Of a DNA stretch of 64,000 bases, positions 35,874 to 42,726 are shown one piece after another. Below the pieces are notes generated by a model. It had not been told where the DNA came from and ran no database searches. It saw only the letters and a list, made by a program, of their open reading frames with translations. The stretch's first letter is position 1. Every line of letters starts with the position of its first letter. The DNA is from Hyaloraphidium curvatum SAG 235-1 (taxonomy: Eukaryota; Fungi; Monoblepharomycota): NCBI GenBank assembly GCA_025558095.1, contig JAIVFI010000025.1, positions 186,001 to 250,000 on the forward strand. The letters are read 5' to 3'. The translations under genes and the position numbers were made by a program.

Positions 35874-36586
35874 ATGGCGGTGGTACCCGCCGACGTGGTG
35901 TACGTGCAGAGCAAAATCCGCATCATTCCCGACTTTCCAATCAAGGTGGGTCCCCGGCGGCACCATCAGCCCGCGATGCGTGCGGGAACTGACCCCCGCG
36001 TCTCCAGGGCATCATGTTCCAGGCAAGCCTTGCGCGCCTCCAGTATAAGCTCCGCGTCCAACCCGCAGCTCCTGTAGGACATCATGCCGATCTTCCAGGA
36101 TCCGCTGGCCGTGGAGGCCATCATCACCCACTTTACGCACCACCTCCTCGTCGCCGGCCCCAAGGTCGACGTGATCGTCGGCCTGGACGCGCGGGGCTTC
36201 CTCTTCGGTCCGATCCTCGCCCAGCGGCTGCACTGCTCCTTTGTTCCGGTGCGGAAGAAGGGCAAGCTTCCTGGCGACGTCATCGTCTACCAGTATGTTG
36301 CTCCGTGCCCCACATGGCCTTCTGCTGACGGAGGCCACGCAGGTACAAGAAAGAGTACGGGGTCGACGAGTTCGAGATGCAGAAGGACTCTGTCAAGCCG
36401 GGCCAGAACGTCGTGGTCGTCGACGACCTCATCGCCACGGGAGGATCCGCAAAGGGGGCGGGCGAGCTGGTGACGCAGCTTGGCGGGAAAGTGATCGAGT
36501 ACCTCTTTGTCGTGGAGCTCGTCGCGCTCAAGGGGGCGGAAGCGCTCTCCGCGCCAGTATATAGCTTCATCAAGTCTGATGATTGA
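35874..36586 (+). CDS. APT1: Adenine phosphoribosyltransferase
   Basis: IPDFPIK|GIMFQ|[32 protein letters not shown] motif [13 protein letters not shown]. Three introns. Confidence 0.95.
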
Positions 36587-36657: not shown

Positions 36658-37443
36658 CTACTTCCGAGCCACCTTCGCGGCCGCGCGCCTTTCCATGGCG
36701 GAGACGATGCGCCTCGCGATGTAGACCGTGGCCGCGGCTTCGAGCGGCACAAGCGGCGTGGTGATGGTGAATGCAACGGCGAGGACGACGGGGTCCAGTC
36801 CGAAGTTGTCGACAAAGAAGCGCATCACCGCGTTGGGCTCGGCGGGAGCGGACTCCTTCTCCGCGTCCTTTGGGTCCGAACCCATGCCCACGAAAGCCTT
36901 TGCCTTGTCCAGCTGCCGAAGAAGGTACTCCGTGTCCATGCCGAGGGTAACGAACAAAGCGTAGGTCGAGAGAAGCAGAATGGTGGAAATGACGAAGTAT
37001 ACAACAGCGCCGACGGCCCCGTACTTGGCGATGATCGCCTTGAAGTCCGTTTTAGGCTCTGTGCCCTTCTGGTCCCCGGAGGGCTGCGGCGCGGCCGCGT
37101 TTCCCGCGCCCGCCTGGCCCGCCGAGGATTGCGACGCGTCCGCGTTCCCCGCGTTCGGTTTGGAAGACATGGCGCGCGTTGTGTGGGTGAGTCCTACTAG
37201 GGCGGAAGCGTTGCCAAAGTGCGAGAAGGAGCACGGCCCCAGAAACAGGCTCTTGGAGCCGAGCGTGTTGAGCTTCCAGCGCTCCAGCAGCTGCGACGAC
37301 GAGGGCGAGCCCGCGAGGGACGTGCCCATCGTCGACGACGGGAACCGCACGGTCGCCGCGATGCGCTTCGAGCAGGGGCCGACATCGACGCGGATGGCGT
37401 TGAGCGCCGTGCGCGTCGCGACGTAGATGCGCGACTTGACCAT
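36658..37443 (-). CDS. FAM210/DUF1279-like mitochondrial membrane protein
   Basis: FKAIIAKYGAVGAVVYFVIS..LAVAFTITTPLVPLEAAAT pattern; basic N-terminus. Start uncertain (37443 or 37329). Confidence 0.7.
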   Translation of the reverse strand: MVKSRIYVATRTALNAIRVDVGPCSKRIAATVRFPSSTMGTSLAGSPSSSQLLERWKLNTLGSKSLFLGPCSFSHFGNASALVGLTHTTRAMSSKPNAGNADASQSSAGQAGAGNAAAPQPSGDQKGTEPKTDFKAIIAKYGAVGAVVYFVISTILLLSTYALFVTLGMDTEYLLRQLDKAKAFVGMGSDPKDAEKESAPAEPNAVMRFFVDNFGLDPVVLAVAFTITTPLVPLEAAATVYIARRIVSAMERRAAAKVARK

Positions 37444-37728: not shown

Positions 37729-37880
37729 TTTGATCAAGCTTTGATCAAGTGATACTGTACGGACTCCCGCCTCATCACCTTGGGGGGTTTGCGGCCAACC
37801 ACGTGATCGGTCCCGCCGTCCCATCAAGACTTTCCCCCAAATTCCCCATCTGGGCCGCCTCCATCTCGAATCGATTCGCG
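37729..37880. promoter_or_regulatory. Candidate cis-elements in the divergent FAM210/TLK promoter
   Basis: TTTGATCAAG-C-TTTGATCAAG (37729-37749), CACGTG (37800-37805), palindrome GAATCGATTC (37868-37877). Confidence 0.3.
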
Positions 37881-37971
37881 TTCTGTGATTCGATTCTGAT
37901 TTGTGCCGGGCTTCGGCTCGGCGCCGCTGCGTCCGCGGGCCCCTGCTGTGCCCAGAGATTCGGACGCCGCG

Positions 37972-40900
37972 ATGCTGTCCCACCTGGAACCCGACGAGGA
38001 TGGCGCCAAAACGGCGGTCCAGGCGCTGTCGCCCTTCTCGCCGCGCTCTCACAAGAGGAAAGCGCCTGCAGTTGCAGCCATCGACGACGTGGCGTCGCCC
38101 GCAAAGAAGGCGAAGCCGCCCGCGGACGGTGCCTCGCGCCAGGGCTCCTTCTCCCCGGCCACGCCGCGCCGAGCCCGTGATCAGGTGTCTCAATCGTCTC
38201 CGGTGCGCGCCCGCTCCTTCGTGGACGCGTCGGGCTTCTTCAGCTCCCCTCCCGGGAAGGCAAAAGGACGCGACCTTTCTCTGCCGGACTTGGACCAGCG
38301 GAAACTCGAGCTGCTCGAAGCGAGGCTGCTAGGGCGGAAAGCCGGAACGACTCCGAGCGCCGTCTTTTCCCCGCCTAGATCCACCCGAAGCGGAGACCGC
38401 GGCAGCAGGTCCGCTTTCCGAACGCGCGACCTGTCGGGGCCAGGGGACGGCTTGTTCAACGTGGCGTCGCCGCAATCGTCGCAGGCCTCGTCTCCTTCGG
38501 CAACACCTCGCTCTAGACGGAGTCAAGCGAGCGTCGCGCGATCCGGACGTGCTTCGAACGACGCTTTGGCGGTGGCCCCGTTGCCGTCGGGAGTGGCGCC
38601 TCGACCTCTGCCTGCGCTTTCTCCGCGAACCAAAGGAGGCGGTCCCGACGACTCGTTCGAAGAAGAGACGGAGGACGAGGACGATGAAGACGAGGTCGAG
38701 GAGATGGTCACCTTCGAGGGCGATGCGGACGACCACCGCACGACCAAAACGCCGGCGGACCGCGAATCCCAGGCTTCCCCAAACGGCAACCGCATCGTTC
38801 TGCAAATGACGGACAGCATGATTCACTCGCAGGTCGGGCCCGATCGCAGCCCGACGCATTCCGGCGCAGTGCACGTTTCGTCGCAGGGAAGCCCGGTGCG
38901 GTCACACGCGGAGGACGCCCACCCTTTCCAATTCCGCAGCCTGCTCGACGGCGAGTTCTACTCTCCTCCTCCTGGATCGCATCCTCCTGTCGCGGCTCCA
39001 TCGAAACCTGCACCTGGAACGGGGACTGGGGAGAAGAAGCGCATCCGGAAGTTCACGGAGGCCGAGGACCAGCTGCTGACCGGCGGAGTTGCGCGGCACG
39101 GGACCGACTGGGAGGAAGTCGCCAAGTTTGCCTTTCCCGGCGGCGATCGCACTGCCGAGCAAGTCAAGAGTAGGTGGAAGCGTCTTACCAAGAAGAAGAA
39201 GGACGAAGCACAGGGATCGCAACTGGCTTCAGAAGCAACACCCCTGGCTTCCGAGGCGGTCAAACCGCTGCATTCGAGTCCCGTGGCCGGCGAGGTGACC
39301 GCACCGCGGGCATTGGCGGACGTCGTGGACCTTACATCGCCGATCAAGCTCGGCGGCAAAGGCCACCGACCTTACGTGAACTCTCCGCACGAGGACGCCG
39401 TGGGATCCGGGGGCCCCTCGGCCGTCAACAGCCCGACGAAGCTGGGCTCGGCTGCGAAAGGCCACCATGCACGGCCGATCTACGAGTACTTTTCTCGCAG
39501 GGACGGGGCGTCGATGCCTGTGCCGGGGAAGGGTTCCCGTTTCCCGGAACGAGAGCACACCGTGGACGGGAGCGGTGCGAGGGAGTTTCCCGATTCCTGG
39601 CGCCGCGAGCAGGAGCAGATGAAGCTGCAAGCGGCGCAGCTGCTGGCAAAGCTGCAAGAGCAGGAGAAGGAGAAGGCTTCGTTGCAGAACAAGCTGGATG
39701 AACTGGAGCGGCAGCGCGAGGACTTGGTCCAGCGGCATTCGAGCGTCGTCAGGGAGGCCGAAAGCAAGATCCTCGAAGCGCAGCAAAACAAGAAGGCGCA
39801 GCTGGAGCGGTCGAGGACGATACTCACGGAGCTTCTGACAACTCAAGCACGCGAAAAAGCGCGCGAGAAGCGCCGCAAGTGCAACGAGAACAGCCTCCGC
39901 CTCGCAAGCATGACGGTCGAAAGGTGAGCGTCAGAGCCGAAACTGCTTCTCGAAGCGTCCTCAATGATCTATGTAGAAGCGGCATGGAGCTCCAAGAACG
40001 CTGGGAAGAGGGGTACGAGTTCCAGGAAGTCGAGGACAAGATCTCCCGCATCGCCGTCGAGAAGGAGGAGATCGAGAAGCGTCGGAAGCTGTTGACCAAG
40101 CGTCGGAACCTGGTTCCGAAACCCGCTCCGGCCGCGGATGGAGTCTTCGCCGTTCCGGATCCGCCACAGAAGGACGCTACGGCAAAGCCGCGGAAGGGCG
40201 CTGGATCTTCGCGGACGGCGACGGAAGAAGAGCCTCTGTCCCTTCAGGACTTCTACGAGCAGGACGAGATCCTGAAGCTCCGCATCGGGACTCTACGGAA
40301 GGAGGAGGCAGAGCTGAATGCATATCTCGCCAAGCTTCAGATCGACAGGAACCAGCACGTGCGCGAGATGCGTCGCATTCGGGACGAAAATGCTTCGCGC
40401 TTCAACAACAACCCGATCCTGTGCGAACGCTATCTTCTGATGGAATTGCTCGGACGCGGTGGCTTTAGCGAAGTATGGAAGGCTTGGGATCTGAACGAGA
40501 TGACGATTGTCGCCGTCAAGTGCGTTTTGTGTCTGCTCGTCAGTTCGACCAATCTAACGCCTCCACAGGATCCATTCTCTCAATTCGCAGTGGAGCGAGG
40601 AGCGCAAACGGTCCTACACTCGGCATGCAATTCGCGAGTACCGGATTCACAAGTCTCTTGTGCATCCGCGCATCATCCGGCTGTGGGACGTCTTCGAGAT
40701 CGACGACACGAGCTTCGCAACTGTGCTGGATTTCAACGACGGGGTCGATCTCGAGACGTACCTTCAGACAGTGAAGACCATTCCGGAACGGGAGGCCCGC
40801 TCGATCATTACTCAGGTTGTCAGCGCCTTGAAGTGGGTTGCAAGGGCTGCTGAAAGCTGCACCTTAACTTTTGAATGCCCAGGTACCTCAATGAGTTGCC

Positions 40901-41507
40901 GAAGCCCATCATCCACTACGATCTCAAGCCCGGCAACATCCTGCTGTCCAATGGCGAAGTTCGCATCACGGACTTTGGGCTCAGCAAGATCCTGGAGCCT
41001 GCCTCGACGGAAGATGGAGACGCTGGCTTTGGAGGCCGCCGCGAGTTCGGTCCGCGCGAGATGGAGCTCACAAGCCAGGGTGCCGGGACCTACTGGTACC
41101 TGCCCCCGGAGGTCTTTGAGCGATCCAGGGGCGGCCCGCCCATGATCTCGTCGAAAGTCGACGTGTGGAGCCTCGGCGTCATCTTCTACGAGATCCTCTA
41201 CGGCGAGAAGCCTTTCGCCAACGACAAGTCGCAGCAGTCGATCCTTCGCACTGATACCATCACAATGGAAGCGCACAGCTTAGTCTTCCCCGCAAAACCG
41301 GCCGTCAGTCAGGAGACGAAGGTGACTGTTTGCTCATGCCTTGTTGGGCCCCGGGCCTCATTCTGATAACCTTCGCAGGATTTCATCCGCCGGCTGCTGG
41401 AGTACCGAAAGGACAAGCGGCCGGATGTGCTGGCGATCGCGAACGACCCATACATCAATGTGGCCCTGGGAAAGCAGTCGACGGCAAAGAGCGGAGCGAC
41501 GCTGTAG
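37972..41507 (+). CDS. TLK: Tousled-like kinase with an N-terminal Myb/SANT domain
   Basis: Coiled coil ending [12 protein letters not shown]|[15 protein letters not shown]; [71 protein letters not shown]. Four introns. Myb repeat at ~39040-39190. Confidence 0.93.
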
Positions 41508-41544
41508 AGATTTGGCTTGGCATTGGAAGACTACAGGCAATTGA

Positions 41545-42726
41545 TCATCTCGATCTCCCTCTCGTGATGATCGTGCGAGCGAGCCGACCAAAGGCGCTGG
41601 ATAACGTCCGCCGAAGGGCAGCAGGATTGCGCAAAATGCTGCGACTGAATCCCCTCGCCAAGACCCGCGCCAAGTTTCTGCGCCCGCCTTTGGTAACGGC
41701 TTGCCTGACACTGTTGCGAAACAAGGAAAACACAGCCTTCCTTGCCGAACTGCGAGATGCATTGGTGATGACGTCCGTGATGGAAGTCCCGGCTGGTGCG
41801 TGCCGCCAGTCGACCAGCCTAGCACGCACGAACTCGATTGGTGTAGCCAGTAGGACGGCCATGAACGAGCTCGCGGCGCCGATCCCGGCCAGCTGAAGAA
41901 GCGGCAGTTCTCCGCTCAGGTCCTTGCCCCCTCGTTCCTCTTCCTTCTGCTTCGCCCTTACCACGAGGGCATCGGAGATGCCGTAGTACAGGGAAATCGT
42001 CGGAAAGGTAGCAGCGAACGACGTGACTGCCCCACGGTACAGCGGTCGAGGTCCTTCGCGAAACAGCGTTTGCAGGAGCAGCCGGCTGACACTCGGGGCC
42101 GGCGCTCCCGTTGCCAGGAGCCGATCGCGCGCAAGCTGAGTGTTCGAGATCGGTGCCCAAATCGACGTCTCCAGAAGCTGTGCTATTGTGGCCGCCGCCG
42201 CACCGTGTAGCAGGTAGTCCATTGGAGACCCTGCGCCGCTGGGAACCAGGCCAGCGTTCCTCAACCCCTGGCGCACGACCTCATACGAGGCAACGAGGAG
42301 GCCGGTTGCGGGCGCTTTCCTCGTTGCTACAAGCTTCAAGTCCTCCGAAATGGGCTTCATTTTCCAGCCGTGCTTCGACCCTCCTCCTTCTATCCAGAAT
42401 AGCACGAACTCGGCCACGAACCCAGCAGCAGATCCGAGAAGCACGGTCTGGAAGAATGACGTGCTTTCCAGCAGCCTTTCGACGCGCTTTTCACGTTCCT
42501 CGAGCTCGATATCGCCGTCCAAAGGTAAGCCCGGCGCGGTTGAAGGCCGGGCGCCCGGCGACAGCGACGAGGTCGACGGGACCTCCGGCCCCGCCACACC
42601 GCCATCGTGTCCGCCATCGGCCGATGAGCGAAGCTCCCTCTTCTCCGATGCCGTGGTTGCTTCTCCAAGGGGACCCAGCGCCGTCGCGTCTTGGCTGGGC
42701 ACCGCCATTTGCGAGTCACGGACCAT
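41545..42726 (-). CDS. Degenerate mitochondrial carrier (SLC25) family protein
   Basis: Carrier-like repeats (LLHGAAAATIA..WAPISN..EGPRPLYRG..ISLYYGISD; AGIGAASSFMAVLLATPIEFVRARL). Only one canonical Px[DE]xx[KR] motif. Confidence 0.75.
   Translation of the reverse strand: MVRDSQMAVPSQDATALGPLGEATTASEKRELRSSADGGHDGGVAGPEVPSTSSLSPGARPSTAPGLPLDGDIELEEREKRVERLLESTSFFQTVLLGSAAGFVAEFVLFWIEGGGSKHGWKMKPISEDLKLVATRKAPATGLLVASYEVVRQGLRNAGLVPSGAGSPMDYLLHGAAAATIAQLLETSIWAPISNTQLARDRLLATGAPAPSVSRLLLQTLFREGPRPLYRGAVTSFAATFPTISLYYGISDALVVRAKQKEEERGGKDLSGELPLLQLAGIGAASSFMAVLLATPIEFVRARLVDWRHAPAGTSITDVITNASRSSARKAVFSLFRNSVRQAVTKGGRRNLARVLARGFSRSILRNPAALRRTLSSAFGRLARTIITRGRSR

What the first reader, a model, noticed from the sequence alone, without database searches (positions are those of the whole stretch)
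39040..39190. Myb/SANT domain inside a Tousled-like kinase
Seen: [47 protein letters not shown] lies in the same uninterrupted exon as the TLK coiled coil, so it is not a gene-merging artefact. Known: animal and plant TLKs have a disordered N-terminus, coiled coils and a kinase, with no DNA-binding domain, and yeasts lack TLK. The repeat resembles TRF/telobox-type Myb. Inference: a histone-supply kinase that targets DNA or chromatin directly, perhaps telomeres. The N-terminus is also rich in SP/TP sites.
Basis: partly seen in the sequence, partly recalled or inferred. Interest (0 to 1): 0.8.

Follow-up and report, generated by a model that had tools for sequence, protein, structure and literature searches.

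The report
Ancient Myb repeat in Tousled-like kinase
The Myb domain inside this fungal Tousled-like kinase is real and present in the mRNA, but it is not a local oddity: TLKs of many protists, algae and chytrid fungi carry the same module, while animal and land-plant TLKs lack it.

Summary
Observation confirmed. The window is from Hyaloraphidium curvatum, a monoblepharid fungus. A five-exon gene (37972-41507, +) encodes a 1108-aa Tousled-like kinase (TLK). One Myb repeat lies at residues 359-405 (window 39046-39186). It scores 37.5-38 bits against Pfam PF00249 (cut-off 24.4).

A spliced transcript contig removes exactly the four predicted introns and runs unbroken through exon 1, so the Myb stays in the mRNA. 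The repeat sits between two TLK hallmarks: an ASF1-docking motif (residues 107-121) and the coiled-coil plus kinase region, which aligns end to end with human TLK2 (E 3e-140). This is not a merger of two genes. TLK is single-copy here and ASF1 is present.

The implied uniqueness is wrong. TLKs of chytrids, Capsaspora, Amoebozoa, Naegleria and Pharyngomonas, Anaeramoeba, Cyanophora and Chlorokybus carry the same Myb subtype at the same position. A profile built from those domains picks the TLK locus far above any other Myb in this genome (73 versus 33 bits). The kinase tree follows organism groups, with Myb-less TLKs nested among Myb-bearing ones. The module therefore looks ancestral and repeatedly lost.

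Binding to DNA or chromatin is plausible but untested. A TRF or telomere identity is not supported. I found no paper describing a Myb domain in TLKs.

The parts
37972..39923 (+). Exon 1 of the TLK gene (residues 1-650 and two bases of codon 651). It holds the disordered S/P-rich N-terminus, the ASF1-docking motif, an acidic tract, the Myb repeat, a linker and the first coiled-coil segment.
   Evidence: ORF. Identical to annotated protein P0001. The transcript contig is continuous over 37824-39921.
38290..38334 (+). ASF1-docking (histone H3-mimic) motif [15 protein letters not shown], residues 107-121.
   Evidence: Matches the motif found in many TLKs in the hit set. The TLK2 contact residues Arg12, Leu16, Arg19 and Phe20 (PMC8826447) correspond to K111, L115, R118 and L119.
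39034..39051 (+). Basic patch KKRIRK directly upstream of the Myb repeat (residues 355-360). It could be an NLS and/or a DNA-contacting arm.
   Evidence: Basic cluster listed. A basic patch at this position is conserved in nearly all TLK-Myb sequences (alignment).
39046..39186 (+). Myb/SANT repeat core, residues 359-405, with aromatic triad F361, W380 and W402. The predicted third helix runs on to residue 415 (window 39216).
   Evidence: Pfam PF00249, 37.5-38 bits. The TLK-Myb profile from other taxa scores 73.2 bits at window 39025-39216. AF2 model. 76% identical to the metagenome relative, against 35-36% in the flanks.
39190..39201 (+). KKKK tract at the end of Myb helix 3 (residues 407-410).
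   Evidence: A basic tail is common in the TLK-Myb alignment.
39607..40436 (+). Coiled-coil region, residues about 546-804. Intron 1 (39924-39976) interrupts it.
   Evidence: Aligns with human TLK2 chain 5o0y_A residues 24-572 together with the kinase, E 3.4e-140. 97-98% coverage against animal TLKs.
40437..41456 (+). Protein kinase domain, residues 805-1092, interrupted by introns 2-4 (40520-40568, 40833-40882, 41322-41378). Catalytic motifs are VAVK (829), HYDLKPGN (931) and DFG (950).
   Evidence: Pfam PF00069, 191.5 bits. Motifs. Introns confirmed by the transcript contig.
41379..41507 (+). Exon 5, ending in the stop codon TAG at 41505-41507.
   Evidence: Sequence, P0001 C-terminus, transcript contig.

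Best explanation
This is the single, expressed Tousled-like kinase of Hyaloraphidium curvatum. It keeps an old, TLK-specific module that the well-studied animal and land-plant TLKs lack: one Myb repeat with basic flanks. The repeat lies between the N-terminal ASF1-docking motif and the coiled coils that precede the kinase. Shown here: the domain is real; it is in the mature mRNA; it is under strong purifying selection; it is orthologous to the Myb repeats of TLKs from at least five eukaryotic supergroups. Inferred: the Myb repeat, through its basic third helix and basic flanks, tethers the kinase to DNA or chromatin. Each complex would then present two or more Myb repeats, as single-Myb proteins that act as dimers do. 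The ASF1 bound at the N-terminal motif would be phosphorylated close to the DNA where histones are being deposited. Animals and land plants would reach chromatin through other partners after losing the module.
For: Reality and expression:
- Pfam Myb is above the cut-off.
- The model shows a three-helix fold with a core pLDDT above 90, and only Myb, SANT and TRF folds are retrieved.
- The spliced transcript contig has no joint inside exon 1.

One gene, not two:
- The ASF1-docking motif lies N-terminal to the Myb.
- The TLK2-like coiled coil and kinase lie C-terminal to it (E 3.4e-140).
- All of this sits in one open frame.

Genome context: TLK is single-copy and ASF1 is present.

Conservation:
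- The Myb is 76% identical to a metagenome relative that has the same gene layout, against 35-36% in the flanks.
- 24 of the 150 best TLK cluster representatives, and every full-length named chytrid TLK in the lists, carry the repeat. Homolaphlyctis, a 510-aa entry, does not.
- All 27 tested segments hit PF00249.
- Named carriers span Fungi, Filasterea, Amoebozoa, Heterolobosea, Metamonada, Glaucophyta and Streptophyta.

Orthology of the Myb: a profile built without monoblepharid sequences scores 73.2 bits at the TLK locus. The next best Myb in the genome scores 33.1 bits.

Ancestral state: the kinase tree follows organism groups, and Myb-less TLKs are nested among Myb-bearing ones.

DNA-type leaning:
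- Helix 3 carries invariant Arg residues plus further Lys/Arg, and basic patches flank the domain.
- The profile matches DNA-binding Myb, SNAPc4, Cdc5 and TRF domains (35-47 bits per domain) better than the best SANT of a remodeller (RSC8, 26.6 bits).
Against: - No binding data exist.
- The 45-50-residue core is net neutral in H. curvatum (pI 6.8) and acidic in most chytrids (pI 4.9-5.7). Only the flanks make it basic, and an acidic helix 1 is also a SANT-like trait.
- The fold search ranks a SANT domain second and cannot separate the subtypes.
- The upstream basic patch could simply be a nuclear localisation signal.
- Transcript evidence is one assembled contig from one run. It cannot exclude a minor isoform that lacks the Myb.
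- Ancestral presence is inferred from an unrooted tree with weak deep branches and a hand-picked set of 40 sequences.
Confidence: 0.6

Rival explanations
1. The repeat works as a SANT-type module. It binds histone tails or nucleosome surfaces rather than DNA, and so links the ASF1 kinase to its histone cargo or to newly assembled nucleosomes.
For: The core domain is neutral to acidic in many orthologues, with a conserved acidic helix 1 (invariant E and D). Foldseek ranks a human SANT domain second, at rmsd 1.2 A. TLK's pathway concerns histones H3-H4 (PMC8826447).
Against: Helix 3 is strongly basic with invariant arginines, and the domain has basic flanks. Sequence profiles favour DNA-binding Myb, TRF, SNAPc4 and Cdc5 domains (35-47 bits per domain) over remodeller SANT (26.6 bits).
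Confidence: 0.22
2. The repeat is a TRF/telobox-type telomeric DNA binder that takes TLK to telomeres.
For: It is a single Myb repeat in a protein expected to dimerise, as in TRF1 and TRF2. The TLK-Myb profile reaches 42 bits on the TRF1 Myb. TRF2, NgTRF and Terfa are among the fold matches.
Against: - The H. curvatum repeat scores higher with Trichomonas MYB21 (28.7 bits) than with Terfa (25.8), TRF2 (18) or TRF1 (15.8).
- The profile's best per-domain match is MYB21 R1, at 47 bits.
- The repeat is internal rather than C-terminal, and Pfam finds no TRFH domain.
- Helix 3 reads RT..Q.K.R.xR, closer to c-Myb R1/R2 than to the TRF pattern visible in the alignments.
Confidence: 0.08
3. The repeat is a protein-protein docking or regulatory module with no direct chromatin contact. 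It might bind a partner or hold the kinase in check, and the basic patches would be nuclear localisation signals only.
For: Some Myb/SANT folds serve only as protein interaction modules. One example is the FLASH/YARP SANT/Myb domain that binds NPAT (PMC7432317, title and abstract seen). Basic clusters next to the domain fit NLS patterns.
Against: The most conserved positions lie on the third helix, which is the recognition helix in DNA-binding Myb domains (from established knowledge of Myb structures); these positions are R, T, R and R. No partner is known.
Confidence: 0.08
4. The fusion is an artefact (merged gene model, misassembly) or a recent lineage-specific capture of a Myb exon.
For: None found. 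The only transcript evidence is an assembled contig, which in principle could join overlapping transcripts.
Against: - One open frame holds TLK-specific motifs on both sides of the Myb.
- The contig shows spliced introns.
- A metagenome relative has the same layout on an independent contig, and so do more than 20 named species.
- The TLK-Myb profile prefers this locus by 40 bits over any other Myb in the genome.
Confidence: 0.02

Closest known systems
Animal Tousled-like kinases TLK1/TLK2 (human TLK2, PDB 5O0Y)
   Same: The coiled-coil plus kinase region aligns end to end (E 3.4e-140), with 46-48% identity to animal TLKs over 97% of residues 560-1108. The catalytic motifs are present. The N-terminal ASF1-docking H3-mimic motif has conserved contact residues. 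The N-terminus is disordered and rich in S/P.
   Different: Animal TLKs have no Myb repeat: none of the animal entries listed is hit by the TLK-Myb profile. Here the ASF1 motif lies about 107 residues in from the N-terminus, rather than at the extreme N-terminus as in human TLK2 (residues 2-22, PMC8826447).
Myb-bearing TLKs in public protein sets, uncharacterised (e.g. Naegleria gruberi XP_002670108, Capsaspora owczarzaki 'tousled-Like Kinase family member', Cyanophora, Chlorokybus, Anaeramoeba, chytrids such as Rhizophlyctis rosea and Gonapodya)
   Same: The order of parts is the same: basic patch, one Myb repeat, basic tail, coiled coils, kinase. They share the signature FT.EED...G...G..W..I......RT..Q...R[YFW].R. 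In the kinase tree Gonapodya is the nearest named relative (64% identity, support 94).
   Different: H. curvatum has a longer N-terminus, so its Myb starts at residue 359. Its helix 2-3 loop is FAFPGGD instead of the usual W..LD. Its third aromatic residue is W, where most have Y or F.
Single-Myb DNA binders that act as dimers (TRF1/TRF2, plant telomere-binding Myb proteins) and R-type Myb repeats (c-Myb, Trichomonas MYB21)
   Same: Three-helix Myb fold at rmsd 1.1-1.5 A. Basic recognition helix and a basic N-terminal arm. One repeat per chain in a protein expected to oligomerise.
   Different: No TRFH domain or other TRF feature. There is no preferential similarity to TRF over R-type Myb. DNA binding is untested.

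Membership tests
Tousled-like kinase (TLK) | Kinase domain orthologous to TLK1/2, outside the major kinase groups | tested here: met
   The only PDB match below 1e-30 is human TLK2 (E 3.4e-140). The best database hits are annotated TLKs. In the kinase tree it sits in a starred chytrid TLK clade, within a wider grouping with the animal TLKs (support 89, not starred).
Tousled-like kinase (TLK) | Coiled-coil region directly N-terminal to the kinase | tested here: met
   Residues 549-1099 align with 5o0y_A 24-572, which includes the region upstream of the kinase. Coverage against animal TLKs is 97-98%. No separate coiled-coil predictor was run.
Tousled-like kinase (TLK) | N-terminal ASF1-docking motif that mimics histone H3 helix alpha3 | tested here: met
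   [15 protein letters not shown] at residues 107-121. The contact positions named in PMC8826447 are conserved as K, L, R and L. This is sequence evidence only.
Tousled-like kinase (TLK) | Intact catalytic residues | tested here: met
   VAVK at 829, HYDLKPGN at 931, DFG at 950, GTYWYLPPE at 988.
Tousled-like kinase (TLK) | Phosphorylates ASF1 | not testable with these tools
   An ASF1 gene is present in the genome (PF04729, 102.9 and 87.8 bits).
Myb/SANT repeat (Pfam PF00249) | Profile match above the curated cut-off | tested here: met
   37.5-38 bits against a cut-off of 24.4. PF13921 scores 31-36 bits against 22.9.
Myb/SANT repeat (Pfam PF00249) | Three-helix bundle with regularly spaced aromatic residues | tested here: met
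   AF2 helices at 363-376, 380-387 and 395-415, with core pLDDT above 90. F361, W380 and W402 are read from the sequence. Fold matches at rmsd 1.1-1.5 A.
Myb/SANT repeat (Pfam PF00249) | Binds DNA (Myb type) rather than histones (SANT type) | tested here: inconclusive
   Basic helix 3 and flanks, but a neutral or acidic core. Profiles lean towards DNA-binding Myb. The fold search does not discriminate.
TRF/telobox telomeric Myb | Closer to TRF-type Myb than to other Myb classes | tested here: not met
   MYB21 28.7 bits, then Terfa 25.8, TRF2 18 and TRF1 15.8. For the profile: MYB21 R1 47, TRF1 42, c-Myb R1 35.
TRF/telobox telomeric Myb | C-terminal Myb together with a TRFH dimerisation domain | tested here: not met
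   The Myb is internal (359-405 of 1108). Pfam finds no TRFH domain.
TRF/telobox telomeric Myb | Binds telomeric repeat DNA | not testable with these tools
   Needs EMSA, SELEX or ChIP.

The most novel reading that the evidence does not exclude
The Myb repeat was part of TLK in the last common ancestor of eukaryotes and binds DNA directly. The original TLK would then have been a DNA-tethered, dimeric ASF1 kinase. Animals, land plants and others lost the tether independently and replaced it with protein-mediated recruitment. If so, model-organism work has missed a basic feature of how histone supply was first coupled to DNA.
Probability: 0.35. Interest if true: 0.7.

Novelty: new variant of a known kind. 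Interest (0 to 1): 0.55.

Why it matters
TLKs are described from animals and plants as kinases with a disordered N-terminus, coiled coils and a kinase domain, and no nucleic-acid-binding module. How they find replicating or damaged chromatin is still being worked out through partners such as ASF1 and PCNA (PMC8826447; PMC11879137, title and abstract seen). A conserved, TLK-specific Myb repeat occurs in fungi, a close unicellular relative of animals, amoebae, excavates and basal algae. That suggests the familiar architecture is a reduced one, and it offers a direct experimental handle on how TLK is targeted. Some carriers, such as Capsaspora, Naegleria and chytrids, are to my knowledge genetically tractable.

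Tried and rejected
- Gene-merging or assembly artefact: rejected.
- In-frame removal of the Myb by splicing: the one transcript contig has no joint in exon 1. A rare isoform cannot be excluded, because contigs drop minor variants.
- A second, Myb-less TLK paralogue in the genome: none. The next kinase hit is only 39% identical.
- Recent capture from another Myb gene of the same genome: rejected by the 73 versus 33 bit gap.
- TRF/telobox identity: not supported.
- Charge as a Myb-versus-SANT discriminator: the first figure (pI 9.7) came from the basic flanks. The core alone is neutral, so this argument was dropped.
- Literature: searches pairing Tousled or TLK with Myb, SANT, chytrid, fungi, protists, Naegleria and Capsaspora found no paper describing a Myb domain in a TLK. 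An Entamoeba Myb survey does not mention kinases. This is absence from a limited open-access library, not proof.
- Frame errors: two calls failed on a wrong reading frame and were corrected.
Exons were translated by reference, and the identical database protein P0001 was used wherever a full-length sequence was needed.
- dN/dS against the metagenome relative was not computed, because about 49% protein identity implies saturated synonymous sites. Regional amino-acid identity was used instead.
- The third word-index protein search was left unused.
Full report
**Source and gene model.** The window is from Hyaloraphidium curvatum, a monoblepharid fungus. The exon 1 translation is 100% identical to NCBI protein DFJ74DRAFT_681313 (P0001, 1108 aa), whose precomputed Pfam domains are already PF00249 plus PF00069. 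Read exon by exon from the sequence, the gene is:
- ATG at 37972;
- exons 37972-39923, 39977-40519, 40569-40832, 40883-41321 and 41379-41507;
- stop codon TAG at 41505-41507.

I did not type or join a spliced model. Where a full-length protein was needed I used P0001, which a tool returned and which matches the exon translations.

- The peptide lies at window 39046-39186, residues 359-405.
- Pfam PF00249 scores 38 bits on the ORF and 37.5 bits on P0001, against a cut-off of 24.4. PF13921 also passes.
- With an alignment of 30 TLK Myb segments, AlphaFold2 predicts three helices (363-376, 380-387, 395-415) with core pLDDT above 90.
- Foldseek against the PDB returns only Myb, SANT and TRF domains, at rmsd 1.1-1.5 A over 45-52 residues.
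- The aromatic triad is F361, W380 and W402.
- SP/TP dipeptides are enriched in the N-terminus: 18 in residues 1-355 against about 7.8 expected, and none in the coiled coil or kinase. Seven fit [ST]Px[KR].

**Is it in the mRNA and in one gene?**
- One public run holds a 4691-nt contig that lies on 37824-39921 without interruption. It then skips exactly four GT..AG introns (53, 49, 50 and 57 nt) at the predicted borders. The precise splicing shows the contig comes from RNA, so the Myb is retained.
- The Myb is bracketed by TLK-specific features within one open frame.
- Upstream, at residues 107-121, is [15 protein letters not shown]. This matches the TLK2 N-terminal peptide that docks on ASF1 by mimicking histone H3. 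The contact residues Arg12, Leu16, Arg19 and Phe20 named in PMC8826447 appear here as K, L, R and L.
- Downstream, residues 549-1099 align end to end with human TLK2 (5o0y_A residues 24-572, E 3.4e-140). That is the only PDB hit below 1e-30.
- The catalytic motifs are intact.
- TLK is single-copy in the 31.9-Mb assembly, and an ASF1 gene is present.
- A gene-merging artefact is therefore excluded as far as these data go. The caveat is that this is one assembled contig from one run, so a minor isoform cannot be ruled out.

**Is the architecture unusual?** Only relative to animals and land plants. An exhaustive HMMER search with P0001 returned the 150 best TLK cluster representatives. A local phmmer search, followed by hmmsearch with a profile of the first hits, found an N-terminal Myb repeat in 24 of them. 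Names from cluster look-ups and the word search place the carriers in these groups:

| Group | Taxa |
|---|---|
| Chytrid fungi | Gonapodya, Fimicolochytrium, Thoreauomyces, Gaertneriomyces, Geranomyces, Borealophlyctis, Rhizophlyctis, Synchytrium, Polyrhizophydium |
| Filasterea | Capsaspora |
| Amoebozoa | Planoprotostelium, Thecamoeba, Pellita, Luapelamoeba |
| Heterolobosea | Naegleria, Pharyngomonas |
| Metamonada | two Anaeramoeba species |
| Glaucophyta | Cyanophora |
| Streptophyte algae | Chlorokybus |

- All 27 segments tested hit PF00249.
- Six full-length named proteins pass Pfam's cut-off.
- None of the animal TLKs listed is hit by the TLK-Myb profile. Neither are Ilex, Porphyra and the nucleariid Nk52.
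- A 4-kb metagenome contig from a relative of Hyaloraphidium has the same layout: Myb, coiled coil ending at the same exon border, then kinase.

**Same Myb or repeated fusions?**
- The repeats share position and a signature: a basic patch, then FT.EED...G...G..W..I......RT..Q...R[YFW].R, then a basic tail.
- A profile built only from non-monoblepharid TLKs scores 73.2 bits at window 39025-39216 when run against the whole H. curvatum genome. The next best Myb in the genome scores 33.1 bits. The H. curvatum repeat is therefore an orthologous member of a TLK-specific Myb subfamily.
- A 40-row tree of the kinase region follows organism groups. Support values: chytrids 99, Hyaloraphidium with Gonapodya 94, animals 100, Ilex with Chlorokybus and Porphyra 93, and an amoebozoan group of three 91 (Planoprotostelium falls outside it).
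- In that tree the Myb-less TLKs are nested among Myb-bearing ones, and at least five changes of state are needed.
- The simplest reading is one ancient origin followed by several losses. One 'loss', Homolaphlyctis at 510 aa, is probably a truncated gene model.
- Deep branches are weak, the tree is unrooted, and I chose the rows by availability of names. I dropped two fragmentary rows, P0168 and P0135.

**Selection.** Against the metagenome relative, the Myb block with its basic flanks is 76% identical. The preceding region is 35% identical, the following linker 36%, and the coiled coil 67%. The kinase is 80% identical.

**What does it do?** This part is inferred.

For DNA binding:
- Helix 3 carries invariant Arg residues and further Lys/Arg, and basic patches flank the domain in almost all orthologues.
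- The TLK-Myb profile matches DNA-binding Myb repeats best: Trichomonas MYB21 R1 at 47 bits, TRF1 at 42, c-Myb R1 at 35 and R3 at 34, plus SNAPc4 and Cdc5. The best remodeller SANT, RSC8, reaches 26.6 bits.

Against, or neutral:
- The 45-50-residue core is net neutral here and acidic in most chytrids.
- Helix 1 carries an invariant acidic pair.
- The fold search ranks a SANT domain second.

My preferred model is that the coiled coils bring two or more Myb repeats together, so the complex binds DNA or chromatin while the N-terminal motif holds ASF1 for phosphorylation. The oligomerisation is from my own knowledge of TLK2, not tested here. I put about 0.5 on direct DNA binding and about 0.95 on the architecture being genuine and ancient.

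The telomere idea has no specific support. TRF-type domains are not the best matches, the repeat is internal, and no TRFH domain is present.

**Known or new?** The domain combination is visible in automatic annotation of public proteins. Some carriers are even named 'tousled-like kinase'. I found no paper that describes or discusses a Myb domain in TLKs. The ASF1-docking paper compares TLK N-termini across animals, plants and some protists and never mentions Myb. I therefore rate it a new variant of a known kind.

Noticed in passing
window 38290-38334: The TLK N-terminus carries the ASF1-docking H3-mimic motif [15 protein letters not shown] about 107 residues in from the start, not at the extreme N-terminus as in human TLK2. 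Gaertneriomyces, Borealophlyctis and Chlorokybus Myb-TLKs also have it upstream of the Myb. My simple pattern did not find it in many other Myb-TLKs, including Naegleria, Capsaspora and the amoebozoans.
   Followed up: partly
window 38794-38820, 38932-38952, 39325-39345, 39469-39510: Short islands are conserved between H. curvatum and the metagenome relative inside otherwise diverged disordered regions: [22 protein letters not shown] and [17 protein letters not shown] is also present in Gonapodya. They may be monoblepharid-specific linear motifs of unknown function.
   Followed up: partly
window 41505-41547: The TLK stop codon (41505-41507) and the stop of the convergent minus-strand gene (ORF 41545-42726) are only about 38 nt apart. 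The transcript contig runs more than 1.1 kb beyond 41600, so the two genes' 3' ends probably overlap, or their transcripts were assembled together.
   Followed up: no
L005:1-4050 (JGI metagenome 3300043314): An environmental contig (56% GC) encodes a TLK with 80% identity in the kinase and the same Myb and exon layout. It presumably comes from an unsequenced relative of Hyaloraphidium.
   Followed up: partly
window 36084-36586 (+) and 36658-37170 (-): Upstream neighbours are an adenine phosphoribosyltransferase-like ORF and, on the minus strand, a small protein with hydrophobic segments. The intergenic space before the TLK start is about 800 nt. Identities are judged by eye only.
   Followed up: no
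proteins P0168 and P0179: Two TLK entries labelled 'UNVERIFIED_CONTAM ... [Acipenser sinensis]' rank among the best hits. P0168 carries a vertebrate-type ASF1 motif. P0168 was left out of the tree as fragmentary and was not examined further.
   Followed up: no
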